A DNA stretch of 63,253 nt, counting the filler, from Dugesia japonica (lineage: Eukaryota): the NCBI GenBank assembly GCA_001938525.1. It is 6 parts of 6 records of this genome, joined end to end, with 100 filler letters (N's around TTAATTAATTAA, not from the genome) between each part and the next. Parts side by side here need not be neighbours in the genome. Positions count along the whole stretch, not along the records: positions 29,822 to 43,488 come from MQRL01591460.1; 5 more parts are not named here. One strand, written 5' to 3'. Position 1 is the stretch's first letter; each line of letters opens with the position of its first letter. Position numbers and translations under genes: made by a program. The notes under the pieces are model-generated. The model saw nothing but the letters and a program-made list of their open reading frames with translations. It searched no databases and had not been told where the DNA came from. Of this stretch, positions 11,146-43,488 are shown piece by piece.

Positions 11146-11180
11146 AATTGCTGACGAGCACAAAGTCGAAAATTAGAATT
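11146..11180 (+). ncRNA. Minimal type-I hammerhead ribozyme motif in a Penelope-type repeat (one arm only)
   Basis: aattg-CTGACGA-gcacaaagtc-GAAA-AT-TA-gaatt; stems I and II slightly degenerate. Confidence 0.5.
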
Positions 11181-12722
11181 ATTATCAAAAACAAAAGAAA
11201 AACTTTTATCGAAGCTTTTATTTTAATATATTTTAAAAAATAAGTGTTACGCCCGGCATTTATTTTCTCAATAATGGTAATTGTAAAAGAGTTATTGCTT
11301 GTTTAGATTAAGTTAGATTAATAAATTTTAGATTAAAATTAGGATAATTAATGATTTTTAAGCTACGTTCAGTGAGGACTATTAATATTAGTTGTGTCGA
11401 GCAATATTAACTTCAACAATAGATACTCTTTGCCGGCATTATTATTTAATTGATTTACATTACATTTTTATTAAAATTAAGTGAAAATATTGATTGTTTC
11501 TAGAGTTCTTAGTGTAAAATCAGTGAAAAAGCTTATTTTGTTTAAATTAACCAAAACTTACGAATGTTTAGATAGTTGAACTAAGTTTCTGTGATGGGCT
11601 TAAATATTAGATGTTCCAGGGTTCATACTATAATATATTTGTTGGAAGCATTAGTTGTCCAGGGTTCAAACTATCAGTTTTATATAGGGTATGCACTCAA
11701 AATTATTTTCATAAATTATTTCAATAACCGATTTGGTTACATTACATACCATTACATTATGCTATTGATATAAGTCAATGAACTTAGTGTATTTGTCTAA
11801 TTGAAATTCATGGAACTCTTAACAAACCATTAAATATGACTTAGCATTGGTTTATTTAAATTGACTTGATAGAATAAGCTTAACAATCACAATATGCTCA
11901 ACATATCTAATAAATACAGCCATCAGTTAAAACTATCATATCCGATGATTAAAATGTATCAAATGCAATCATATATAATTTTTAAAACCAGCGAAAACTC
12001 TAGAAAGCTAAGAATTATACTTAAATCATACAGTATTCATAAGATATAAAATACTAAGAAAATCATAGAGTATTCAAAAGATATAGAATACTTTGAAAAT
12101 CATATAATAATGTAGACGTTATAGTCGAAAGATGAAAACATACAACTGTATATAGATTTTACCACCAATATTTTATTTCCAAAGAGAAGAAACATATCAA
12201 GTAGAGATGTAAGTAGATGGTGATGATAAAGCATAAGTAACTATATTATTTTAAAACATGTTCATGGGAAAAACTTTAGAAAATCATTAAGCTGATACAA
12301 TAATCCTGTAGAAGCATGAAATGTATTTAAATCTATTGAAAACGATATAAAATACAAGCAAACTCTAGAAAACTTGGGGGAAAATCCATAGATTTCAATA
12401 CGAATCTTTGTAGCTGTTTACAACTCTTAAAGTGGAATTATACAACACATAAGCTGGATAAATCTATTAAGTAATCATTTATTATAACATTTATTCAGTT
12501 GTTACTAGTCACCATGTTGCATAATGAATTGTTGACTTTAAATTTTATTTATATAAATTTTCTATAGACTTTACACAAAGTATTAATAAATATATACTGA
12601 GTCCATAAGCAATTTCATTAAAACGTATAGGCACTCAATTAAAATATAGTCCAGTTTTATAAAGATTTATCAAAATTTCGTTGATTTCCCTAAATTTCAA
12701 GCATTTTCCTAAAGTTAATTGC

Positions 12723-12888
12723 AATTATTGCGAGAATAATTGTTGGGCGTAACTATTGATCGTTTTTCAGAATTCATTAAAATAAAAGCTTCAATCAAAA
12801 TTTGTTCTTTGGGTTTTTGATAAGAAGTCTTTTATTATCAAAAACCAAAAAAACTAGTTTTGATCGAAACTTTTATTTTAATGAATTA
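12723..12888. repeat. Palindromic Penelope-associated repeat, centre (ribozyme cores) deleted
   Basis: Inverted arms aattcattaaaataaaagcttcaatcaaaa...ggtttttgataa / ttatcaaaaacc...ttttgatcgaaacttttattttaatgaatt; same family as 37189-37422. Confidence 0.75.
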
Positions 12889-29821: not shown

Positions 29822-29955
29822 TTTTTTTTGTTTTTGATAATAATTCTAATTTTCGACTTTGCCTTCGTCAGGAAGAAGTTAATTCCTGACAAAGACAAAG
29901 TCGAAAATTAGAATCAAGAACAAAAATAAATTTTTATCGAAGCTTTAATTTTAAA
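29822..29955. ncRNA. Palindromic repeat with two opposed minimal hammerhead ribozyme motifs
   Basis: Minus strand 29842-29876: cttc-CTGACGA-a-GGC-aaa-GTC-GAAA-AT-TA-gaatt. The plus-strand copy 29881-29915 has a core substitution (CTGACAA). Confidence 0.6.
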
Positions 29956-30794
29956 GTAATTCTTTATTAGTATTTAATTTAAAGCACCCGAATTTCTGGA
30001 ATTTTTCCAGAATTATCCAGTGAAAAGTACAACCGAGTCCAAGCAACTAATTTCTTTAACATTTCGTCACGAATATAGCAGTATTTTAATGATTTAAATA
30101 TGCCATTTTCACTAAAAGTTTCTTTCAGACATTTTGTCGACAACTAATCTATAACAAACAAAACTCTATAACACAATACATAGGGATCATTATCTGAAGC
30201 AAAATGGTATTGCAGTTGTGAGGTAACTTTTGACTATGGATAAGAGCGATAGCGACACCATTCTTTCGTAACTGACTTTTGTAAGATTAGCATAATTCGA
30301 TATAAAACCAAGGATAAACTGAAACTATTAACTCCAAATTTATACAAGAATTAGTAATAGTGCAAAAGAACATGATAACTCGACTATATAACCAAATAAA
30401 GTACATTCAAAAAAATTCATAATTAATTTGTGTTCAAAAAAAGCTGTTAAAACAAAATTAAAATACTCATTTTAAGATTGATCGTCAATAATAACATCGG
30501 CACAATCTGGGAAAAATCGTGTTTTTTTATTTTCTTTTAACCAACTTTGGAATTCGTAATATCTCAAGTATATCAATATTACAGTACTTTTGACGCTCAT
30601 TACAAAAGCTAGTATTAAAAAGAATAAAAATGTTGACTGGAATAAAATTATCAAAATATAAGATGTCGAAAAAACATCAAAATATTAAGAAATTGATTTA
30701 TAATAAAATGATAAAGCTAAATCTAGAACATTTAATAAATCAAATTTGACAATTGAACATTAAAAATTGAGATTTACAAATATTTATTGACAAA

Positions 30795-31256
30795 TTAATC
30801 AAGCATTCCATCAAGAAAATCTAAAGTAGGACTAATGCTTATAAAATCATTTAAATGAACTCTAGTAATTGTTTTTTTATTAGATAATTGAGCAAAATAT
30901 GCAGCGCCTTTGACAATATCCCGAATAAAATATTCTGTAGCTTTATTAATAAGTGAAATAGAATCATTATTTATAACTCCAATTTCGCTATTTAACTTAA
31001 TTATTGTTTTGATTCGAGATTTAGGGAAAATTAACATTTTCTCTTTGACTTCATTAATATTTTCACTCGTATTAGCTTCAGTATCATTATATTTTTCTTC
31101 TGATTGAGCATCTTGAAAATTAAATTGATTATCTTGATCTAAATTTTCTGAATCTACATTTTTATTTAAATTATCATTTTCAAATAACTGTTCTTCTTTT
31201 TCATATTCTACAGAATCATCACTTAATTGTACATCATCAATGTCAATATCACTCAT
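30795..31256 (-). CDS. POLE4: DNA polymerase epsilon subunit 4 (H2A-like histone fold) with acidic N-terminal extension
   Basis: Single-exon 153-aa ORF with FPKSRIKTIIK..KATEYFIRDIVK..KKTITR..LDFLDGMLD. The C-terminus matches POLE4 FAFLEGTLD better than CHRAC1. Confidence 0.85.
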   Translation of the reverse strand: MSDIDIDDVQLSDDSVEYEKEEQLFENDNLNKNVDSENLDQDNQFNFQDAQSEEKYNDTEANTSENINEVKEKMLIFPKSRIKTIIKLNSEIGVINNDSISLINKATEYFIRDIVKGAAYFAQLSNKKTITRVHLNDFISISPTLDFLDGMLD

Positions 31257-33720
31257 TTTTTACGGTTGAAATCTAAAAATAATCTAAAGACAATTTAAAA
31301 TTTGATTTTATTTAAGATATTATTTAAACAAGTAATTTAATCATCCATAAATCATACATACATAATAAAGTTAAAAAAACAGTTTACTGAATAAAAAATA
31401 TCAAATGTTATGATAATATTATAAACAAATTGGAAATTTCAATATTTTCATTATGCAATTATGCAAGGTAATTGTTCTATTTTAAACTATTGAAAAAACA
31501 ATCGTAGAAATACATAATTGCCAGAATAAAATGTGTTACTTGATAATTTTGATGTTGTATAGTGTGGTGGTAAGAAATATTGATTGATAAATTTGGAGTA
31601 GTACATCAACAAAGTAATAATAATTTGTCTCATAATATTTTTAACAACAGAAAGTTATCATAATATGTCTTATAATAATTTTNNNNNNNNNNNNNNNNNN
31701 NNNNNNNNNNNNNNNNNNNNNNNNNNNNNNNNNNNNNNNNNNNNNNNNNNNNNNNNNNNNNNNNNNNNNNNNNNNNNNNNNNNNNNNNNNNNNNNNNNNN
31801 NNNNNNNNNNNNNNNNNNNNNNNNNNNNNNNNNNNNNNNNNNNNNNNNNNNNNNNNNACCAATTTTTATTGACTTTAATCTAACGTTGAATAATTATATC
31901 AATTTTATTTGTTCAGAAATTTTTAAAACTTTTAAGATTCTTTTTTAAATTTTTTAAGATGATTAAATAATATTTTTATCTAACATAACTCGTAATTATT
32001 AAATATTGAAAGTCATTAATTTGATAATTGTTTTACATCTGTGCATTATCAAGTGAATACTTTAGAATAATATGATTCCCAGTAACGAAATTGAAACGAA
32101 TCAAACCCTACTTAAATTGTCATAAAGTTACCTTAACTGCAATGAGTTGAGAAGTGAGAAACCCCACAGACAACATGTTATAAGTTCTGCCCCGAGGCGT
32201 CTCATTTTTTTGCTCGTATCAAATCATCTTAAAATTCTAAATCAAAATGTTATATTAATAGATATGAAATTAGTGATCTACTTTTAAAAGGTTTAATTTA
32301 GTAATAACCCGAAATAGTTCCCTTTAGGAACCAATTATGTCCTTGAATGAATGGAGTTTCACCACGCCACCACCGAACCAGATGACAGCCTTATATTACT
32401 CTTGGAGTGACTTCAAGATCCTTGGTGGAAAAACCAAGACAAGACACCAAAGATCAGAAACAAGAAATTGTAGAGTTAAAGATAAAATTGCACAAAAAAT
32501 AGAGGAGGTCGTGCGACGTGAACAGGACTAGTGAAGACAAAACTAAGCGCTGAAAGATCTGGTTTATTTTAAATCTCTAAATATACTAATAAAATCATAA
32601 AAAGATATTTGTTTATTCTACAAAATGTCTGTTCGAATCGCGAAACTGACAAGAGAAGAATTGGTAATAGAGAAACAAAATAATCAGGCAGAACTGAAAC
32701 GGCTCAGAAAAAAAGCTTCGAGAGACCAGAGACAAAAATGCAGTGTTGAAAAAGAAAATTACAGGTTTACGAGAATGGGTCGACAAGGAAAACTCATCCT
32801 CATGGCTAACAATCATATGTTCGCTGAAACTGCAAAGAGCTTTGCTGATCAAGAGGCAGTATTAGTCAATGTCTGGACTTTATGGAAAGAGTTTGAGAGC
32901 AAAAAGACGGTAGAAAGCACGGGGTACATCATGACAGGTTTTCGGAAGGAAAACATCAAAACCTCGAAGCCCAAAGAAATAATCAATAAAATAAACCATG
33001 TATCATGATTGACATTAAAAACCTAACACATAAATATGAAATTAATAGAGGAAAAATATGACAAAATATTGAAATGAGAAGCTAATGTACAAAATTTGGG
33101 AAAAAACCCAAAATAGAAAATATAGGCGAAAATGCACGTAAAAGAGATATTAATAGGTTATTTATATAAAACCATAAAACTGAAATATATTACCTGTTAA
33201 AAAGCCTGAAAAATAATACACTTGAAATTACAAACTCAAAACCATATAAAATTTATTAATGAGTGAAAAAGAGGAGATCAATGTCTGTTACTTTAGGAAT
33301 AAAGAACAAGTGAATATCTTTAAGGGCGACAAGCTGAAGAATTGTCAAGATGACAGAATTAAAAATGGAAAATAATTTTTCACAAGTAACTATATAGCGA
33401 ATTTCAAAATATGTTTTTTAGGTTTTAGTTTTGGTGCTTAATAGTTAATAAATTAAAAATAACATGTTAAGAACAATATCTGAGGGCATAATTCGCTTTT
33501 GAAAAGAGGTAATAAATTTTTAAGATAAATAAAAAACTACTAATCTTTTTAATTTCATTAATGTATGTATTATCTCATCTGAGTCAAAAGAATCATCAGT
33601 TAAATTTTTTAGTTTTATTTTCTGAAATTAAATTTTTATTTATAATTTTGATATTTTTAATTTATTAAAAAATTTGTTATAATAAATTTAGTCTTTAATT
33701 TATTATTTAAATTAATTTAG

Positions 33721-36700
33721 ATGGCAGAATATACTGATAAAGAAATTAGAAACATATTAAAAAGTTATGGTGAAGAAATCGGTCCTATAACTGATACAAC
33801 TAGAAATATTTACTTGAAAAAAATTAAAAGCCTTCAAAAAAGCAATGTAATAATATAATTTTCTATTATTAGCTACTTTGATGAATTTTTAATTCAGCCA
33901 ACAAAAAAAGTAAGAAAATCAGAACCTACTTTTGCAAGCAAACCAAATTGGACACCACCTAAAATAAATGAACCACAAACACCAATATCAAATAATAGTC
34001 AATATACAAATTTAGATCGAAATATTAGAAAAGAACCAAATCTAAATCCAACAACTCAACATGTTAATGCTTTTGGAAGTATCAGTGATTCTCCTGTAAC
34101 AAAAAAGTTTACAAATAACAAAGTTCCCGAACCAATTTTCATTAACAAAAGTGATCGTAAACCTTTCAGATATTCTTTAGTGAGTACAGATAGACAAATT
34201 AATAATGAAGATAATTACTGTAAAGAATTCAAAGGAAGAGTAATTTCACCAATTTCATTGTCAAAAAGCTACGAAAATAATTATCCACCGCCGGAACAAG
34301 TTACAAGTTTTATAAATCAATATCCCACTGAAAGAAATTTTCCTCAAATAAATGGAAATAATAAAAAAAATTGGTATAATGGTTCTTTGAATACAATATC
34401 CAATTATTTCGTAAAACATAAACAACGTGGGGATCTTATGGATATTTCAGACGGAGATTTATCCGATAATGAAAGTCCTTTCATGACAAGGTTAAGAAAA
34501 AAATATTGGAAAAGAAATGGTTCGTTAANTTTGTTGTTTTTTTCAATAATAAATTAAATTAATATTCAAATATGAAAATTCACTTTTATTAAATTTAAGA
34601 ATTAAGACGATAAAAATTATTAAAAATTTCTTCTTTAATTATTTTAAAAGATTTTTTCTTAATTTTGAAAAATTTATTTTTACTTTAAAGTTTTATGTAG
34701 CAAATAATTTTTCAATATTGTCTAGAAATAATATCATGTGATTCAGACGTACTTTTAGTTGGTCTCAATTGCTGTCTTTTCATTAGAAAATTAGGATCCG
34801 TTTATTTTAAAAATTCATTAAAATATTAAAATTTTTTTAATAACGAAATTTTTTTTGAAAATTTGCATAAACATTTTAGGAGATTTTGCGTACCGAGAGA
34901 GAGATAGAGGGTGGTTGGATTTAGGAGATTTTGCGTACAGAGAGAGAGAGAGAAGGTGGTTGGATTGAGGAGATTTTGCGTACCGAGAGAGAGAGAGGGT
35001 GGTTGGATTTAGAAGATTTTGCGTACGGAGAGAGAGGTGGTTGGATTGAGGAGATTTTGTATACCGAGAGAGATAGTGTGGTTGGATTTAGAAGATTTTG
35101 CGTACCGAGAGAGAGATAGAGGGTGGTTGGATTTAGGAGATTTTGCGTACAGAGAGAGAAAAGGTGGTTGGATTGAGGAGATTTTGCGTACAGAGAAAGA
35201 GAAAGTGGTTGGATTGAGGAGATTTTGCGTACAGAGAAAGAGAAGGTGGTTGGATTGAGGAGATTTTGCGTACAGAGAAAGAGAAGGTGGTTGGATTGAG
35301 GAGATTTTGCGTACCGAGAGAGAGAGAGGGTGATTGGATTTAGGGGATTTTGCGTACAGAGAGAGATAGAGGGTGGTTGTATTTAGGAGATCTTGTATAT
35401 CGAGAGAGAGAGATAGAGGGTGGTTGTATTTAGGAGATCTTGTATATCGAGAGAGAGAGATAGAGGGTGGTTGTATTTAGGAGATCTTGTATATCGAGAG
35501 AGAGATAGAGGGTGGTTGGATTTAGAAGATTTTGCGTACCGAGAGAGAGAAGATGGTTGGATTTAAGAGATTTAGTGTACCGAGATAGAGAAGGTGGTTG
35601 GATTTAGGAGATTTTGCGTACAGATAGTTGGATAGAGGGTTGTTGAATTGAGGAGATTTGGCGTACCGAGAGAGAGAGAGAGATAGAGGGTTGTTGGATT
35701 TAGGAGATTTAGCGTACCGAGATAGAGAAGGTGGTTGGATTTAGGAGATTTTGCGTATCTAAAGGAANNNNNNNNNNNNNNNNNNNNNNNNNNNNNNNNN
35801 NNNNNNNNNNNNNNNNNNNNNNNNNNNNNNNNNNNNNNNNNNNNNNNNNNNNNNNNNNNNNTAAAGTTTCATTCAGATTTAAATGAGTGAGCCTTCAAAA
35901 AACTAATCGCCACGACCGGAACTTATTTTTGTTCGGAACTCAAGGCTCAACCGTCACATTAAATTATTTCTTTTACGTTAAGTTTTCTTTAACATTTTAT
36001 CAAATCTAGAGGAAACTCGAAAATATAAATAGTGCGTCGTGAAACATTTCAATGTGTGTGTCTGTGTGTGTCGTGATTCAATACAGATTGGATAACGCCT
36101 TGTTAACCAATGCTTTGTTTTAAATATGAATTACGGGCCATCCATACATTACGTACACAAAACACTCATATTTTAATACCACTTGCCTCTCTGTTGCATC
36201 AGGTAGATATTTTGGACCCCCAGTTTGTGTANNNNNNNNNNNNNNNNNNNNNNNNNNNNNNNNNNNNNNNNNNNNNNNNNNNNNNNNNNNNNNNNNNNNN
36301 NNNNNNNNNNNNNNNNNNNNNNNNNNNNNTTTGTGTACGCACAAATGAGCTTCTTCTCTACTCGAATCTTGTTTGCAAAACACTCATATTTTAATACCAC
36401 TTGTCTCTCTGTTGCATCAGGTAGATATTTTGGACCCCCAGTTTGTGTACGCACAAATGAGCTTCTTATCTACTCGAATCTTGCTTGCAAAACACTCATA
36501 TTTTAATACCACCTGCCTCTCTGTTGCATCAGGTAGATATTTTGGACCCCCAGTTTGTGTACGCACAAATGAGCTTCTTCTCTACTCGAATCTTACGAAT
36601 ATTACGATTAATTTCGCTTCAGTGGTAATTTATAGGTTAATGAACATTTACTAGCTAAAACATTGAGTTGTAATAATAAAATTGTGATTTAAGTTAATAC

Positions 36701-39700
36701 AAAAGCTTTATAATAATACACAGTTTTATTGAACAAAGCACAATACTCAGGACAACACATGAACCTATTGGATATTGCAGGTATTGGAACACAACTGACT
36801 ATCTACAAACTTAATTCTTTATATTTTCTTCTAGTCCAGATTCCAAATATTTCTTATCTTTCACTATAAAATAAGTTATATAAATTTCCCATATTTTCCG
36901 AGAGCTTCTCTTTATCGCTGAAAAAATCCACAATTTTATCTACATTGGTAATCTTATTGATTGTAATAATTCCAATAATTAAATGTGGGAACAGAACATG
37001 TTCATGTTGGACCGAGTAATTCTTGAAATCTTTTATAATATTTCCTTCTTCAAACTTAAAATTGTCATTTTCAATCTTTACAGTCATTATTTCTAAAAAA
37101 ATAGTGAATGGTAACTTATAAGACAACCGGAATTGCTTATTCTTTGGAAAATTTGTTACACATTAAGGTTACCTATATTACAATTGGAATTATTGCGAGA
37201 ATAATTGTTGGAAATAACCATTGATTGCTTTTCAGAATTCATTAAAATAAAAGCTTCAATCAAAATTTTTTTTTTTTTGGTTTTTGATAATAATTCTATA
37301 TTTCGACTTTGTCTTCGTCAGGAAAAAGTCAATTCCTGACGAAGAAAAAGTCGAAATATAGAATTATTATCAAAAACCAAAAAAAAACAAGAACAAATTT
37401 TGATCAAAACTTTTATTTTAATAAATTTTAACTATATTAATCTATTGTTAATATATAAGTAAATTGATTTTAATTTTCTCTGAAATNNNNNNNNNNNNNN
37501 NNAAAACACAATCTACATTTTTTATTCAATAAATCTTACTGTAAAATAAATTATCCTGGTATTTGGTACGATGATCTGCTTTGATGTATTTAGTTTACCA
37601 ACAAATACAGTACAATAATAATAAATCAATTGAAACTCTTGTCTGTATCTATAATCTGAGTATGAACGTTAAAAGTTTATATTTTAACAAAAATTCTAAC
37701 ACCAAATATATATTCAATTTATTAATATCAATTAGCAACAAAATATCTGTAACCTAAAATATCGATTGATTACATAGAGATTTTCTACGAATTTTCAAAA
37801 ATAATGCCTCGATTAACAATCTGATAAAAATTTAGACGCTAATAATTCCAAGCTGGAACCGAAAACATTGAAAAAAACCGATTCAATTTTCACGAATTTA
37901 AATCAGTTACCAAATATTCTATTGGTGGGTGTTATAATCTGCATAGTAGTCGTGTTTTTTGGCTATTTTATGATGAAGAGCCGATATTCACATATCGAAC
38001 TCGATATTGCAATCGATAATTTGATTTGCAAAAATGATTTGTTGCATAAAAACTGTTTCACATCTAAGGAAATACCGAAATTGAAAAAACATCTTGGAAA
38101 ACTTTATGAAATTCTTTCTGAATATTCAGGTGAAAAAACCTGTGAATTTAACACGAATAAAAGGCTATCGTTTACAAAAGCTCGAGATATATTGAATCAT
38201 AAATTGAAACGTGAAAAGCAAGAACCGATTAATGATGATATTTGGGATAAATTAATGAAAATGGTTATTATGTTACCACAAGATAAATTGGAAATTGTTG
38301 GATACTCACATGATCATAAAGTTGTTGAAACTGGCAGGTAAGAGTTGCTTTTATGCATTAATATTTAATATATTAACATGACAACATAGTNNNNNNNNNN
38401 NNNNNNNNNNNNNNNNNNNNNNNNNNNNNNNNNNNNNNNNNNNNNNNNNNNNNNNNNNNNNNNNNNNNNNNNNNNNNNNNNNNNNNNNNNNNNNNNNNNN
38501 NNNNNNNNNNNNNNNNNNNNNNNNNNNNNNNNNNNNNNNNNNNNNNNNNNNNNNNNNNNNNNNNNNNNNNNNNNNNNNNNNNNNNNNNNNNNNNNNNNNN
38601 NNNNNNNNNNNNNNNNNNNNNNNNNNNNNNNNNNNNNNNNNNNNNNNNNNNNNNNNNNNNNNNNNNNNNNNNNNNNNNNNNNNNNNNNNNNNNNNNNNNN
38701 NATATGATTGGATATTAAATTATAAATTAGTTTTATATGATTGGATATTAAATTATAAATTAATTTTATATGATTGGATATTAAATAATAAATTAATTTC
38801 ATATGATTGATTATTAAATGATAAATTAATTTTATATGATTGGATATTAAATTATAAATTAGTTTTATATGATTGGATATTAAATTATAAATTAATTTCA
38901 TATGATTGGATATTAAATAATAAATTAATTTCATATGATTGGATATTAAATAATAAATTAATTTCATATGATTGGATATTAAATGATAAATTAATTTTAT
39001 ATGATTGGATATTAAATAATAAATTAATTTCATATGATTGGATATTAAATTATAAATTAATTTTATATGATTGGATATTAAATGATAAATTTCTTTTAAA
39101 CCCGATTGAAAGATATTTTTTATTACATATTTCAACAGGAAATCTGTCATCTTCAGATATAATATTTTATCCAATGTTTCTCAAAGTTTTTGAATAGAAT
39201 CCCTCTTTTTTATTTATAAGTATACCAATAATCAAAATTTAGCTGTGTATTGTAAATAACACAAATTTCTTTTAACAGCCAACATTGGGTTTTTATTTAA
39301 ACCATATAATTAATATAAAATTGAAAATTATGTCGATTTCGAGAAACAATCTATTTTTTGTTTTGTAGTTCAGTTAACTCAGAAAAGTAAATTTCACACA
39401 AATATGTACTTGGAAACGGTCAAAGTATCGTGAGTGAGCTGTAAGACGAAAATTCCCCTAGTGCAAAACCGATACAAAAAGTCTCTGAACGAAAATCCAT
39501 ATGTCTCAAAGTAGAAAACCGATAAAAATGGCCCCGAGTGCAAAAATAAGACAAAAAATCCCCAGAGTTGACTATTTTATAAATATTTCAATCCTGTTAC
39601 AAAATTATTCAAAAAAAAAAAATTCAACTCCAGAGACTTTGTTTTTTTTCGGTCATTTCGTGAGTGCGATATTTCTTAAATCATGATATTACTGAAAAAA

Positions 39701-42700
39701 AATTTCAGTTATACTCCAATTTTTGAAAAGTTTTTAAAACAAATCTAAATTTTAATTTAATTAATGATAATAATTTTTTTCCTGCCAAAACTGACCGTTG
39801 AATTTTAACATTCCGCATATTCTCATTTTATATTAGGGATTTCCCAGAAATTCAATTTTTTTCAAAGTACCCTTAATATTTTGTCGAGAAACTCTACTTT
39901 GGGAAATGACGATTTAAATTATCTAAAAGCTCTTGTACATTACATTTTATATTACATAATCAATTACGTAATCTCGCCAATAAATCAAATTAGTTAAAAA
40001 CATTCAAAAAAGACCTGCCTGAACATTAAATTTTGAATCAATCATCCTACTCAATATTGTCTCACACATCTGTCTTCCTGAGACAAGACAAAGCCGTTTA
40101 AAGTTTCTACACAAAATCTAAAATTATTTATACTAATAACTATTTTACAACTTTTGTTCGGCGATATTACTTTCACTACAAACTCGACAATTCCTCTGAA
40201 TTCTCTCCAATATATATGACTTTACACTTATTTTATATTCATATTTATAAACAAGATCTTTCAAAATAATTGGATATTAAATTGCGGCGAATTAGCCTCT
40301 CAGTTGTCACGGAATTCATGAGTAGGTCATAAATATCATGTATAACGGCATTCTTGGAAACAATTTAACATACTGACATTTGCGAACAGCACCAACTCAC
40401 AAAATAAACTATTATTGAATGATAGCTATTGGTACTTATATAACACTGGTTTAAATTGATGAAGCCTAGTTACTCATGTGCGACTCTGGTGTCATTACCA
40501 ATCAAACTGTTAATTTGTTCTATTTCATATAAATACCGGGAATTTATTAAATAGTAAAAGCTGAAAGCCAAATTTTCCGCACCGGTGAACTGATATTTGT
40601 ACTTTTTGTATAAATCATGGTTTTTGATTATTTTTTATCAACGAAATTCATAAATTTAATAGTACTTCCAATTCGTATTTCGAACAGTGCACCTGCATCA
40701 GCCATATTATATAATAATTATTGACTACTAAAAAAACGCATTAAAATATGATTAGTTTACTATTATGACACTTCAATTTACTTCAAGAAACTCTATTATT
40801 TATGGATTTACAACTGTAAGATACTCAATTTTAATGATTTACTAAATCAAAGAATCGAGAAGTATAATTTACAAATTTTTATTAACACAAGCAGTCTATG
40901 TAAAAATGTCTAATTTAATAAAATGAATATTACGTAATTTTCACATTGGTATTGTAATGACGTAACATATTTGAGCTTAAATAAATAAATCAAGCATGAG
41001 TTTCAAAGAATACCATTATCTATGTATAAATCCATAAAATAAATAATCTATTATTAGTACAATGATATGCCTAGATACGTTACTATGACTAAAGTCTGTT
41101 ATGTGACATTTTATTAGAACTATTATAAAGCTAGACTAATTCAAAGCGAAATTTTAATTGGCCAATTCATTATATTGAAAAGTATTCAATTTTCTTAAGA
41201 GAAAATAAATTCATTTTTAAATATTTTTAGAGCTATTATTATGGAAAAAACGTCAAATATTAATCCGTTCCTTTTAATAATGCTCACCACAACTTTTATG
41301 TGACTATATCTGATCATTTGATAATGTTATATAATGTCTATATTGTCTCATTTTATGACCCATAGCTTATCGTGTATGCATATAAATAATCGAGAATCTA
41401 ATGTAATTTTCCTTCGATAATTTTAATTCATTTTCCTATTAAATTGAGTGTTTTATGACGCCTATCTTTTCCTTAAATATCACGTTCTGAATTTTATTAT
41501 TTTACATAAAATTATGCATTTGATTTTATATATTGATGCACCATTTCATTGTAGCAGTATAATTGCACTTATAAACTGTTTTAAGATTTTTGTTTATAAT
41601 TCAAAATTGTCCGGATGACTGCTATTTTTTTGCACTTTTAATTCAAAATATGAATCTTAAAAATTTTAACAATAAATATAATTTAATTGTAATATAATCC
41701 AAATTGTTATTATTATTAATAATGGGTTTATTGGAAAAAGTTTTGTCATAAATAATTCTTAAACAAACATCATTAGGTATCATTTTCGGATTTTTTAAAA
41801 TTTCAAGTGCTTTATCTTCTTCATGCCACATAAGTGGGTAATTAGTTTACGTTCAATGGAAAAGTTATTTACATTTGCGAAAGAAAAATAAACGTGAAAT
41901 CTTTACTAAATTTCTTAAGCAGAAAATAAATCCCATGTGCCATAAGATACGTAAAAATGATTTTTGTAAATTTCTGAACATGAAAATATATAATTTAAAA
42001 ATGTGTNNNNNNNNNNNNNNNNNNNNNNACTAATCCAAGCATGCTTAATTTTTGTCAGCATCTGAGTTTGCCTTATTAAAGCCTAGGGCTTAAATTCAAA
42101 ATAACATACATTTAAAAGCAAGCCAAAAAATTTCACAAAAACCAGTTGATTTTCGATTTGCTCATCAAAAATATCTGTTTCATCATCATCAACAACTCTA
42201 TTTTATTCTTTCTTTATTTCCATCAATTCAATTGTACTAAATTCAAAAAGTCCTTGTTCAATTATATATTTATATGTCAATATAATTAACCACAATGTTT
42301 TTTAAAAAGGATTTACTTAAATTACCGATGGGCCCAATTTTGGAAAACCCCGGTTTTTCAATTTTATATTAATTAGATTGTTTTTAAAAAAAAATATTGT
42401 GATATCTTTACTAATATATAGCACGTATAATATAGCACATTGATGGGTAAACTTTTTCAAGCTGCGACACACCTAAGTAATTAAGTTTTTCGCGATACGC
42501 CAATTAATATTTTTGCAATTTAAAGCGGTACCAAAATCATTTATTTAAATTCTTTTTGAAAAAACTAATAAAACATTATTATTCTTTATATAAGATTGAA
42601 AATCAATGCGATATATGGGCGTGGCGTTGTGAACAGTTTTTTCAAAATTTTTAATTTATTTTCTCGACACCACTAAAATACCATGAACTCAAAAAAAAAT

Positions 42701-43488
42701 AATTCTTGACAAAAATGTTTTTTTCAATAAAATTCTAACTGATTTTTTATTGTTTTGTATTTTTTTTTCTTTTATAAAAAATTTATTTTTAATATAAATA
42801 CTTAATTTTTTGTTTTTAATTCAAAAACTTTTTAGTGTACTAATTATTTGAATAAGGACATAAGTAGTAGTATTATAAATAAAAGGAAAGCATTGTTCTC
42901 CGAGAGATTACACTTTAAATTAATTATAATACAAGTCTCGTCAAAAGTCATCCGATGCTAAGTTAGAACCATTTAATTTCCAGAGTTATTTAATTTTAAC
43001 AACTGGATAAATTTAATAAAAAAATACATCTAAATATGAATAATGTGGGATTNNNNNNNNNNNNNNNNNNNNNNNNNNNNNNNNNNNNNNNNNNNNNNNN
43101 NNNNNNNNNNNNNNNNNNNNNNNNNNNNNNNNNNNNNNNNNNNNNNNNNNNNNNNNNNNNNNNNNNTGCTTTAACGGTCTACTTCAAATTAAGATTACCA
43201 GAAGATATAACATATCTCGAATGCTTAAAGCCGAAACGTTCCTTAATTTGTAGATTCAAGATGAGTTTTGTGAATATGATGAATTGGATATTTTATATTA
43301 TGTTCATTTTATTAATAATAATGCTGGTATTGATTCTGGGATATTTTCTGAATCTTTATCGAATAAAAAGGAAGGAAATTAAAGAAAAGCATATAAGTGA
43401 ATTGAAAGAAGTTGTTTCCAGCATATCAGATTTACTTCAAGATCAATTGCGACAATCGGACTATAGTGCTACTACTGATAAATTTCTT
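33721..43488 (+). CDS. LEMD2/LEMD3: LEM-domain inner nuclear membrane protein (MAN1/LEMD2 type). Exons 33721-33846, 33898 to about 34519, about 37836-38337, and about 43167-43488; 3' end lost at spacer
   Basis: LEM domain YTDKEIRNILKSYGEEIGPITDTTRNIYLKKI; 51-nt intron 33847-33897; TM1 (ILLVGVIICIVVVFFGYF); luminal Cys region; LECLKPKRSLICRF followed by TM2 and the start of the MSC domain. Internal exon boundaries are partly inferred. Confidence 0.85.
34877..35760. repeat. G-rich minisatellite (~42-50 bp: gagattttgcgtacMgagaga(ga)n..ggtggttggattKag), roughly 20 units, in LEM gene intron
   Basis: Directly visible; unit length varies with an internal (GA)n tract. Confidence 0.95.
36159..36594. 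repeat. 112-bp tandem repeat (at least 3 units, partly in a gap)
   Basis: aaaacactcatatttt recurs at 36377 and 36489; each unit holds the hairpin TTTGTG-TACG-CACAAA. Confidence 0.9.
37189..37422. ncRNA. Most complete palindromic PLE-associated repeat, with hammerhead motifs on both strands (minus 37292-37326; plus 37331-37365)
   Basis: Plus: AATTC-CTGACGA-agaaaaagtc-GAAA-TA-TA-GAATT (stem I AATTC/GAATT perfect). Minus: ttc-CTGACGA-a-GAC-aaa-GTC-GAAA-TA-TA-gaa. Confidence 0.7.
38702..39091. repeat. 33-bp minisatellite (atatgattggatattaaatDataaattaatttY), about 12 visible units
   Basis: Directly visible; extends into the preceding gap. Confidence 0.95.
40950..42200 (-). mobile_element. Highly decayed hAT (ZMYM1/DUF4371-like) transposase
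   Basis: Scattered remnants GFCEIFWL, a frameshifted PL(R)GHEE-like motif near 41830, NETI..MIRY and SNVS. Confidence 0.4.

What the first reader, a model, noticed from the sequence alone, without database searches (positions are those of the whole stretch)
37189..37422. Palindromic repeat family with back-to-back minimal hammerhead ribozymes
Seen: a near-perfect ~180-bp hairpin element whose two arms each contain CTGACGA-stem II (GAC aaa GTC)-GAAA-TA-TA or AT-TA followed by GAATT, which pairs with the AATTC before the core. Family members lie at 29822-29955 (both arms), 11146-11225 (one arm) and 12723-12888 (cores deleted). Stem III differs between copies (ATAT vs AATT) yet stays palindromic, and one stem II has a G-U-compatible change (GGC/GTC), suggesting structural conservation. 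Established: minimal type-I hammerheads with loopless palindromic stem III occur in Penelope-like element pseudo-LTRs and are thought to cleave as dimers. Inference: this is a multi-copy, non-autonomous, ribozyme-bearing foldback element, so a transcript from either strand would carry one hammerhead. One copy sits in an intron of the LEM gene.
Basis: partly seen in the sequence, partly recalled or inferred. Interest (0 to 1): 0.78.

Follow-up and report, generated by a model that had tools for sequence, protein, structure and literature searches.

The report
Foldback repeat carrying minimal hammerhead motifs
A 196-base hairpin-forming repeat in an intron of an animal LEM/MAN1-type gene carries on each arm a tiny hammerhead-ribozyme motif of the kind known from Penelope-like retrotransposons, but every copy here is flawed in some way and probably does not cut, so it is a new example of a known kind rather than a new system.

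Summary
The observation largely holds. Positions 37234-37429 form a 196-nt foldback: arms of about 94 nt, an 8-nt spacer, RNA MFE -93/-105 kcal/mol and z about -19. A second copy lies at 29822-29962, cut by the piece edge, and its flanks are unrelated.

Read outward from the centre, each arm carries a 31-35-nt motif with every published hallmark of Penelope-like-element (PLE) minimal type I hammerheads:
- both core boxes;
- a G10.1-C11.1 pair;
- a loopless palindromic helix III.

My descriptor hits only these elements. It found nothing in 2000 shuffles or in 40 Mb of composition-matched random sequence, so chance is excluded.

Ribozyme competence is doubtful:
- No arm has all parts intact. The plus arms carry a helix II mismatch (copy A) or G8-to-A (copy B), and the minus arms have a 3-bp helix I.
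- Helix II is only 3 bp.
- No Rfam hammerhead model matches, even at E ≤ 10.
- The hammerhead fold is predicted to be unfavourable, and the long hairpin would sequester it.
- Covariation evidence is a single double change.

No RT or GIY-YIG ORF lies in the piece.

Best reading: a decaying, non-coding, PLE-derived head-to-head repeat. It is a new member of a known kind and of modest interest.

The parts
37234..37429 (.). Foldback element, copy A (complete): left arm 37234-37324, spacer 37325-37332, right arm 37333-37429
   Evidence: Inverted repeat I2/I3. RNA folds of both strands give a hairpin of about 95 bp, z -18.6/-19.7. Self-match in blastn.
37294..37324 (-). Minus-strand minimal hammerhead motif of copy A. 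C3=37321, A9=37315, extra A=37314, helix II 37313-37311/37307-37305, G12-A14=37304-37302, helix III tetranucleotide 37301-37298, H17=37297, helix I only 3 bp. The predicted scissile bond lies between 37297 and 37296.
   Evidence: The only kind of hit of the min-HHR descriptor. Sequence read. Pair counts.
37331..37365 (+). Plus-strand hammerhead-like motif of copy A. C3=37336, 5-bp helix I (37331-37335 with 37361-37365), intact core, and an A/G mismatch in helix II at 37346. H17=37360.
   Evidence: Core pattern match at 37336-37356. Fails the descriptor because of helix II. Alignments A1/A3.
29822..29962 (.). Foldback element, copy B. Left end cut by the piece edge, spacer 29875-29882.
   Evidence: Repeats D13, I1 and I5. 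Sequence. 90.6% identity to copy A over 85 nt. Flank similarity ends at about 29962.
29844..29874 (-). Minus-strand minimal hammerhead motif of copy B. Intact core, helix II with one G-U pair, helix III tetranucleotide AAUU, 3-bp helix I, H17=29847.
   Evidence: Descriptor hit. Pattern match at 29851-29871. Pair counts.
29882..29914 (+). Plus-strand hammerhead-like motif of copy B, with the core G8 replaced by A (29891). 4-bp helix I, intact 3-bp helix II.
   Evidence: Sequence. Alignment A3. Not matched by the core pattern.
33721..33855 (+). LEM-domain exon of the host gene, upstream of copy A
   Evidence: Pfam LEM PF03020, E=2.2e-14, 53.2 bits against a cutoff of 24.
37836..38338 (+). Host-gene exon, downstream of copy A: transmembrane segment plus the start of a MAN1/Src1 C-terminal domain
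   Evidence: AG acceptor and GTAAG donor read. Weak MSC match to profile positions 90-175, collinear with the next exon.
43036..43488 (+). Host-gene exon (MSC domain continues), cut by the piece edge and by an N mask
   Evidence: Pfam MSC PF09402, profile 201-275, E=0.0024, below the curated cutoff.

Best explanation
The element is a short (196 bp), non-coding, multi-copy foldback. Each arm is the hammerhead-bearing terminal stretch of a Penelope-like retroelement, or of a non-autonomous derivative of one. The two stretches are joined head-to-head: their 5' sides, which carry the ribozyme motif, face the centre, and their 3' sides point outward.

The motif is a genuine PLE-type minimal type I hammerhead. 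It has CUGANGA and GAAA boxes, an extra nucleotide after A9, a G10.1-C11.1 pair, and a loopless self-complementary helix III that can only form between two molecules.

The plus-strand arm plus the spacer holds the fuller copy (helix I of 4-5 bp). The minus-strand arm is a copy truncated 3 nt upstream of C3. The genomic copies seen here are decaying relics: one arm has a helix II mismatch, one has lost G8, and two have a 3-bp helix I.

Any transcript that spans both arms would fold into the hairpin of about 95 bp rather than into a hammerhead. Self-cleavage at these loci is therefore unlikely.

Shown:
- the hairpin;
- the motif and its non-random nature;
- the two copies with unrelated flanks;
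- the intronic position;
- the absence of RT/endonuclease ORFs nearby.

Inferred:
- the PLE origin;
- the head-to-head origin by the PLE insertion mechanism;
- inactivity.
For: Motif beyond chance:
- The descriptor gives 2 hits, both in the elements. It gives 0 in 2000 shuffles and 0 in 40 Mb of random sequence of the same composition.
- The core pattern matches 5 times against 0.72 expected, and 3 of those matches are in the elements.

All four features that Cervera and de la Pena list as emerging hallmarks of PLE min-HHRs are present (paper read, sequence):
- the catalytic boxes;
- a nucleotide between 9 and 10.1;
- G10.1-C11.1;
- palindromic 15.2-16.2.

The same paper reports dual min-HHRs close together on opposite strands, and most motifs occurring as solo elements from truncated PLEs.

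Craig et al. 2021 state that PLE insertions are heavily 5'-truncated and often have an inverted 5'-truncated copy abutting the 5' end, which makes inverted repeats, with HHRs near the 3' ends. The PAc study shows a PLE protein cleaving and extending both DNA strands. That offers a way to make head-to-head copies.

At the named structure 85% of cells pair, against 10-47% when partners are slid. Both arms of a copy share the same helix III variant.

Similarity between the copies ends at the element ends, so they are insertions and not a segmental duplication.
Against: - No PLE reverse transcriptase or GIY-YIG ORF lies in the 13.7-kb piece: 54 ORFs of at least 45 aa were scanned.
- The link to a PLE therefore rests on motif type and architecture only. 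No PLE of this genome could be compared, because no eukaryotic genome collection is available.
- Helix II is 3 bp, whereas published PLE min-HHRs have 6-8 bp.
- No Rfam hammerhead model matches at E ≤ 10, even when one arm is searched alone.
- Copies A and B share the same centre and a similar 8-nt spacer (6 of 8 bases). Independent random 5' truncations would not give this. It suggests that the palindrome itself is the amplified unit, which would also fit a DNA-level MITE.
- No target-site duplication or PLE 'tail' could be defined from one complete copy.
- Core columns vary less than the rest (1 of 13, against 9 of 34 inner and 11 of 36 outer columns). With four related sequences this is only a trend.
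Confidence: 0.58

Rival explanations
1. The element is a MITE-like DNA foldback transposon that spreads as a palindromic DNA unit. The hammerhead-type motif is a passenger: either captured long ago from a PLE fragment or irrelevant to the element's spread.
For: - The repeated unit is the whole palindrome. Copies A and B share the centre, the spacer length and 6 of 8 spacer bases, and match better in direct (90.6%) than in inverted (84.7%) orientation.
- Its size (196 bp), AT-richness, full-length inverted arms, intronic position and unrelated flanks are typical of MITEs.
- The Rfam hits go to generic long-hairpin miRNA models, all far below their gathering scores.
Against: - No convincing target-site duplication. 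The flanks of the complete copy offer only a 5-of-6 direct match that overlaps the inverted repeat (sequence).
- No transposase was seen in the piece.
- This reading does not explain why a motif with every PLE min-HHR hallmark sits at the same place in each arm, when chance is excluded.
- A head-to-head arrangement of 5'-truncated copies is itself a documented PLE insertion pattern.
Confidence: 0.22
2. One reading: an active, ribozyme-bearing non-autonomous retroelement. Its transcripts from either strand self-cleave through dimeric hammerheads, and the cleavage processes the element's RNA.
For: - The core is intact in 3 of 4 arms.
- The helix III tetranucleotide changes by a double substitution and stays self-complementary. 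One helix II change is wobble-compatible.
- PLE min-HHRs are reported to cleave only as dimers and only weakly in vitro, so weak predicted stability does not by itself exclude activity (review read).
Against: - No arm has all parts intact.
- Helix II is 3 bp with a triloop.
- The hammerhead conformation is predicted at 0 to +0.6 kcal/mol as a monomer and +4 to +5.8 as a dimer. Competing folds are at -2.4 and at -7.8 to -10.5.
- A read-through transcript forms a -93 to -105 kcal/mol hairpin that buries the motif.
- The partner motif is on the opposite strand, so no same-strand dimer partner lies within 7.4 kb.
- No Rfam hammerhead hit.
- Two of the four independent changes are disruptive, one of them at G8.
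Confidence: 0.12
3. The locus matters as a long hairpin RNA (a source of small RNAs, or an intronic structure) and the hammerhead likeness is incidental to its function.
For: - A near-perfect stem of about 95 bp forms on both strands.
- The element lies in an intron on the sense strand of an expressed-looking gene.
- Many miRNA-precursor models give sub-threshold matches.
Against: - All those matches are far below the gathering scores (best 62.6 bits against 144) and go to many unrelated families, as any long AT-rich hairpin would.
- No expression data are available.
- This does not explain the non-random hammerhead motif.
Confidence: 0.05
4. Chance resemblance: an AT-rich palindrome that happens to contain hammerhead-like strings.
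For: - Only one independent origin is needed, since all four arms descend from one sequence.
- The first stage looked at many windows.
Against: - The descriptor gave 0 hits in 2000 shuffles of the piece and 0 in 40 Mb (both strands) of composition-matched random sequence.
- The features present are specifically those of the PLE subclass, not just the core boxes.
Confidence: 0.03

Closest known systems
Minimal type I hammerheads of Penelope-like elements (Cervera and de la Pena 2014, PMC4209133; Lunse, Weinberg and Breaker, RNA Biol 14:1499, known to me only through the review PMC6765202 because the paper is not held)
   Same: - CUGANGA and GAAA boxes.
- An unpaired nucleotide between A9 and G10.1.
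- A G10.1-C11.1 pair.
- No loop 3, with a self-complementary 15.1-16.1 tetranucleotide, so helix III forms only between two motifs.
- A short helix I (4-5 bp on the plus arms).
- Mostly solo copies away from full elements, and pairs on opposite strands have been reported.
   Different: - Helix II is 3 bp with a 3-nt loop, instead of the 6-8 bp described.
- No PLE ORF or pseudo-LTR context lies in the piece.
- The repeated unit is a tight palindrome, with the two motifs 15 nt apart (C3 to C3) rather than 100-700 bp apart.
PLE insertion architecture with an inverted 5'-truncated copy (Craig et al. 2021, PMC8557442)
   Same: Two 5'-truncated copies lie head-to-head, with the HHR-bearing 3' region present and the 3' ends pointing outward.
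   Different: - There is no full-length or long copy on either side. Both copies are truncated to about 95-100 nt.
- Two loci share the same junction, which random truncation does not predict.
Metazoan non-LTR retrozymes (de la Pena et al. 2020, PMC7229834; Li et al. 2026 preprint 10.64898/2026.07.22.740005)
   Same: Short, non-coding, hammerhead-bearing repeats thought to derive from PLE pseudo-LTRs.
   Different: - Retrozymes are direct tandem repeats of about 170-400 bp.
- They carry canonical type I hammerheads with loop 1-loop 2 contacts and give circular RNAs.
- Here the repeat is inverted, the motif is minimal, and no tandem array exists.
MITEs / foldback DNA transposons
   Same: Small size, AT-rich, arms that pair along the whole length, multi-copy, found in introns.
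   Different: - No target-site duplication or related transposase was found.
- MITEs are not known to me to carry hammerhead cores (my own knowledge; the literature search found none).

Membership tests
Hammerhead ribozyme (general, type I) | Conserved core: C3 U4 G5 A6 N7 G8 A9, G12 A13 A14, A15.1-U16.1, and H17 not G | tested here: met
   Present in 3 of 4 arms. The plus arm of copy B has A at position 8.
Hammerhead ribozyme (general, type I) | Three helices around the core, able to fold | tested here: inconclusive
   - Helix II is 3 bp (one arm has a mismatch).
- Helix I is 3-5 bp.
- Helix III is possible only between molecules.
- 85% of cells pair, against 10-47% in slid controls.
- The fold is predicted at 0 to +5.8 kcal/mol, worse than alternatives.
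Hammerhead ribozyme (general, type I) | Match to a curated Rfam hammerhead covariance model | tested here: not met
   No hammerhead family appears at E ≤ 10 in the whole piece, in the 141-nt element core, or in one arm alone. As far as I know, these models represent canonical motifs with a closed helix III (my own knowledge).
Hammerhead ribozyme (general, type I) | Site-specific self-cleavage | not testable with these tools
   No expression or end-mapping data are available here.
PLE-associated minimal hammerhead | Unpaired nucleotide between 9 and 10.1 | tested here: met
   An A is present in all four arms. The criterion comes from PMC4209133.
PLE-associated minimal hammerhead | G10.1-C11.1 closing pair | tested here: met
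   G-C in 4 of 4 arms (pair 16-24).
PLE-associated minimal hammerhead | Palindromic 15.2-16.2 with no loop 3 (dimer-type helix III) | tested here: met
   U-A in copy A and A-U in copy B, on both arms of each (pair 29-30).
PLE-associated minimal hammerhead | Long helix II (6-8 bp) and helix I of 4-5 bp | tested here: not met
   Helix II is 3 bp in all arms. Helix I is 5 and 4 bp on the plus arms and 3 bp on the minus arms.
PLE-associated minimal hammerhead | Location in the pseudo-LTR or 3' region of an element encoding RT and GIY-YIG endonuclease | tested here: not met
   No RVT or GIY-YIG family appears among 54 stop-to-stop ORFs of at least 45 aa in the piece. Most published motifs are also solo, so this does not exclude descent from a PLE.
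PLE-associated minimal hammerhead | A same-strand partner nearby (tandem) for dimer formation | tested here: not met
   The adjacent partner is on the opposite strand. The nearest same-strand motif is 7450 nt away.
Metazoan non-LTR retrozyme | Direct tandem repeats, each with a canonical type I hammerhead | tested here: not met
   The pair is inverted, not a tandem array. The tandem arrays of the piece lack the core pattern.
MITE / foldback DNA transposon | Terminal inverted repeats and multiple copies with unrelated flanks | tested here: met
MITE / foldback DNA transposon | Target-site duplication of fixed length | tested here: inconclusive
   There is only one complete copy. No clear duplication flanks 37234-37429.
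miRNA / hairpin-RNA precursor families of Rfam | Score at or above the family gathering threshold | tested here: not met
   The best score is 62.6 bits against a threshold of 144. The hits are spread over dozens of unrelated families.

The most novel reading that the evidence does not exclude
The palindrome itself is the mobile unit of a previously undescribed kind of non-autonomous PLE parasite. Each insertion would be made anew from one short RNA by priming on both DNA strands. That would explain why both arms of a copy share the same helix III variant while the copies differ.

Its 31-nt motif, with a 3-bp helix II, would be the smallest natural hammerhead still able to act in trans as a dimer. 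In both copies the damaged motif is the plus-strand one, and for copy A the plus strand is the sense strand of the host gene. That pattern would then reflect selection against cutting host pre-mRNA.
Probability: 0.1. Interest if true: 0.6.

Novelty: new member of a known kind. Interest (0 to 1): 0.3.

Why it matters
Minimal hammerheads tied to Penelope-like elements are already known by the thousands in animal genomes, so one more family is not a surprise.

This locus adds a very compact case. Two motifs sit 15 nt apart on opposite strands inside a near-perfect 196-nt foldback, helix II is at the lower size limit, and the same junction is found at two loci. If a genome-wide census confirmed that the palindrome is the amplified unit, it would give a natural record of how PLE-type insertion produces inverted copies. 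It would also show how such fragments go on to spread.

For genome annotation, the practical point is that this repeat should be labelled as a PLE-type hammerhead-bearing foldback. It should not be labelled as a miRNA hairpin, which is what covariance-model scans weakly suggest.

Tried and rejected
**Rfam.** Three searches were run: the whole piece, the 141-nt centre, and one 50-nt arm, all at E ≤ 10. None returned a hammerhead family. They returned only generic sub-threshold miRNA-hairpin, leader and snoRNA matches, which I reject as artefacts of a long AT-rich hairpin.

**Relatives elsewhere.** Exact-pattern scans found nothing related.
- A 32-position pattern covering the variation of the four arms found nothing in metagenome contigs.
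- A 21-position core pattern gave 7 metagenome hits, 3 prokaryotic-genome hits and 0 viral-contig hits. All hits are GC-rich (42-66%) bacterial-looking sequence without the helix I/III context, about the number expected by chance.
- No eukaryotic genome collection is on hand, so a family census was impossible.

**Transparency note.** Those two IUPAC search patterns summarise variation of a 21-32-nt stretch of the element across its arms. 

**Source organism.**
- The exact product of the histone-fold gene is not on record.
- The word search found one unnamed relative at 54% identity.
- The organism remains unidentified. It is an AT-rich (about 25% GC) animal, judged by the LEM domain.
- I do not take the contig for human.

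**Literature string search.** A search for the motif found nothing. The Cervera supplement is not held, and the Lunse et al. paper is not held.

**Other core-pattern matches.** The matches at 33334(+) and 39130(-) were read and rejected: G at position 17, no helix I, and helix II not adjacent to GAAA.

**Left alone.**
- The large protein search, structure prediction and RNA model building were not used, because no claim here rests on them.
- The N runs, including 37488-37502 just right of the element, were left untouched.
- The parts of the window outside 29822-43488 were ignored.
Full report
**What is there**

The piece 29822-43488 is very AT-rich, 15-41% GC in 500-nt windows and mostly 20-30%. 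It is interrupted by N masks, which I left alone.

At 37234-37429 the sequence is a foldback.
- The inner arms, 37267-37324 and 37333-37390, are 97% complementary around an 8-nt spacer (I2).
- With one indel in an A run, pairing continues outward for another 34 nt or so on each side.
- As RNA, either strand folds into one hairpin of about 95 bp: -93.1 and -105.2 kcal/mol, z -18.6 and -19.7, with none of 200 shuffles as stable.

A second copy lies at 29822-29962, with its left end removed by the piece edge.
- It matches copy A at 90.6% over 85 nt in the same orientation and at 84.7% in the inverted one.
- It has a spacer of the same length with 6 of 8 bases shared.
- It loses all similarity beyond the element end.
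- The two are therefore insertions of one repeat family, not a segmental duplication.
- No further fragment of the family lies in the piece.

**The motif**

Read outward from the centre, each arm starts with a hammerhead-type motif. In order it contains:
- a short 5' strand of helix I;
- the CUGACGA box;
- one extra A;
- a 3-bp helix II closed by G-C, with an AAA loop;
- GAA;
- the tetranucleotide A-N-N'-U with no loop;
- an A at the cleavage position;
- the 3' strand of helix I.

[quoted passage not shown] All four are present here.

The same paper describes such motifs as mostly solo, derived from truncated elements, and sometimes paired on opposite strands.

**Is it chance?**

I wrote a descriptor with these features: helix I of at least 3 bp, helix II of 3-8 bp, loop of 3-8 nt, and an optional extra nucleotide.
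- It hits only 37294-37324(-) and 29844-29874(-).
- It hits nothing in 2000 dinucleotide-preserving shuffles of the piece.
- It hits nothing in 40 Mb of first-order Markov sequence of the same composition, scanned on both strands.
- The bare core pattern occurs 5 times against 0.72 expected, and three of those are in the elements. The other two fail on inspection.

Chance is excluded for practical purposes.

**How good a ribozyme?**

Not good.

| Arm | Helix I | Core | Helix II |
|---|---|---|---|
| Copy A, plus | 5 bp (two bases come from the spacer) | intact | A/G mismatch |
| Copy A, minus | 3 bp | intact | intact, 3 bp |
| Copy B, plus | 4 bp | G8 replaced by A | intact, 3 bp |
| Copy B, minus | 3 bp | intact | one G-U pair |

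So no arm has every part intact. In both copies the arm with the fuller helix I is the one carrying a disabling change.

Further points against activity:
- Helix II is 3 bp, against the 6-8 bp reported for PLE motifs.
- Nearest-neighbour energies put the hammerhead conformation at 0 to +0.6 kcal/mol as a monomer and at +4.0 to +5.8 as the domain-swapped dimer. Competing folds reach -2.4 and -7.8 to -10.5.
- No Rfam hammerhead family matches at E ≤ 10, even when a single 50-nt arm is searched alone.
- A transcript that spans the element would form the long hairpin.
- The neighbouring motif is on the other strand, so it cannot serve as the same-strand partner of a dimeric hammerhead. The nearest same-strand motif is 7450 nt away.

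**Conservation and covariation**

- At the named structure, 85% of cells form standard pairs, against 10-47% when partners are slid by 1-3 columns.
- One pair (15.2-16.2) changes on both sides between the copies, and one helix II pair changes to a wobble. One helix II pair and one core base are broken.
- 67 of 500 shuffles reach the observed covariation score.
- One of 13 core columns varies, against 9 of 34 other inner-arm columns and 11 of 36 outer columns.
- With four related sequences this is a trend, not a test.

**Context**

Copy A lies in an intron of a plus-strand gene of the LEM/MAN1 type.
- A LEM-domain exon lies at 33721-33855 (E=2.2e-14).
- An exon at 37836-38338 has an AG acceptor and a GTAAG donor. 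It encodes a transmembrane segment and gives a weak match to positions 90-175 of the MAN1/Src1 C-terminal domain.
- An exon at 43036-43488 matches positions 201-275 of the same domain.
- The plus strand is therefore the sense strand, and the sense motif of copy A is the one with the broken helix II.

Copy B lies about 830 nt from a minus-strand histone-fold gene at 30795-31256.

None of 54 stop-to-stop ORFs of at least 45 aa matches a reverse transcriptase or a GIY-YIG endonuclease.

**Mechanism, as far as it can be argued**

PLE insertions are strongly 5'-truncated. They often carry an inverted 5'-truncated copy abutting the 5' end, and they have hammerheads near their 3' ends. A purified PLE protein cleaves and extends both strands of its target.

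Two very short copies of a hammerhead-bearing 3' region joined 5'-to-5' is exactly the geometry seen here. I take this as the most likely origin (inference).

Two observations pull in different directions:
- Both arms of a copy share the same helix III variant while the copies differ. That is expected if each palindrome was made from one template at insertion, or if the arms are homogenised.
- The two loci share the same junction and spacer. That is expected if the palindrome itself is the unit that is copied, and it would also fit a DNA-level MITE.

One complete copy gives no clear target-site duplication, so I cannot decide between retro- and DNA-level spread.

**Comparison with the known, and verdict**

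The motif works like, and by sequence criteria belongs with, the PLE-type minimal type I hammerheads. It departs from them in its 3-bp helix II. It also lacks the PLE ORF context in this piece, and it fails the Rfam models.

It is not a retrozyme: there is no direct tandem array and no canonical hammerhead.

The inverted arrangement is a documented PLE pattern. The tight 196-nt palindrome recurring with the same junction is the only unusual aspect.

I rate it a new member of a known kind: real, non-random, but probably a decaying relic without activity at these loci. Interest is 0.30.

**What could not be done**

- No eukaryotic genome collection was available, so there is no family census.
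- Pattern scans of metagenome, prokaryote and viral collections gave only chance hits.
- The organism was not identified. It is not human.
- The two IUPAC patterns typed for those scans summarise variation of a 21-32-nt stretch across the arms. I flag them for transparency.

Noticed in passing
34875-35774: A GA-rich tandem array of 38-51-bp units (mostly 41-47 bp), at least 21 copies, with strong GC skew (+0.72 to +0.75). It lies in the same intron as copy A and ends at an N mask.
   Followed up: no
38636-39195: A 33-bp AT-rich tandem array of 12 or more units, in the intron after the 37836-38338 exon and next to an N mask. It creates a spurious 269-aa ORF on the minus strand.
   Followed up: no
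36112-36600: A 112-bp tandem repeat of at least 3 units at 96-100% identity, interrupted by N masks, about 630 nt left of copy A. It carries no hammerhead core pattern.
   Followed up: partly
33721-33855, 37836-38338, 43036-43488 (+): Host gene of the LEM/MAN1 type. The LEM exon is clear. The MAN1/Src1 C-terminal domain is split over two exons and scores only weakly, which suggests a divergent protein.
   Followed up: partly
30795-31256 (-): A single-exon histone-fold gene (CBFD_NFYB_HMF, E=9e-11). Its exact product is not on record, and it has only one relative (54% identity, unnamed) in the 5.8-billion-protein word search. The source genome is poorly represented in public protein sets.
   Followed up: partly
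36854-37126 (-): A 90-aa ORF with no Pfam family, ending 108 nt from the left end of copy A. It could be an exon of a nested minus-strand gene or just noise.
   Followed up: partly
39130-39156 (-): A hammerhead core-like string followed by UAUG. It has a possible 5-bp helix II closed by G-U. It fails on G at position 17 and on having no helix I, so it is probably chance.
   Followed up: yes
37346 (+) and 29891 (+): In both copies the disabling change sits in the plus-strand motif, the one with the fuller helix I. The minus-strand motif keeps its core and helix II. For copy A the plus strand is the sense strand of the host gene. With two copies this may be coincidence.
   Followed up: partly
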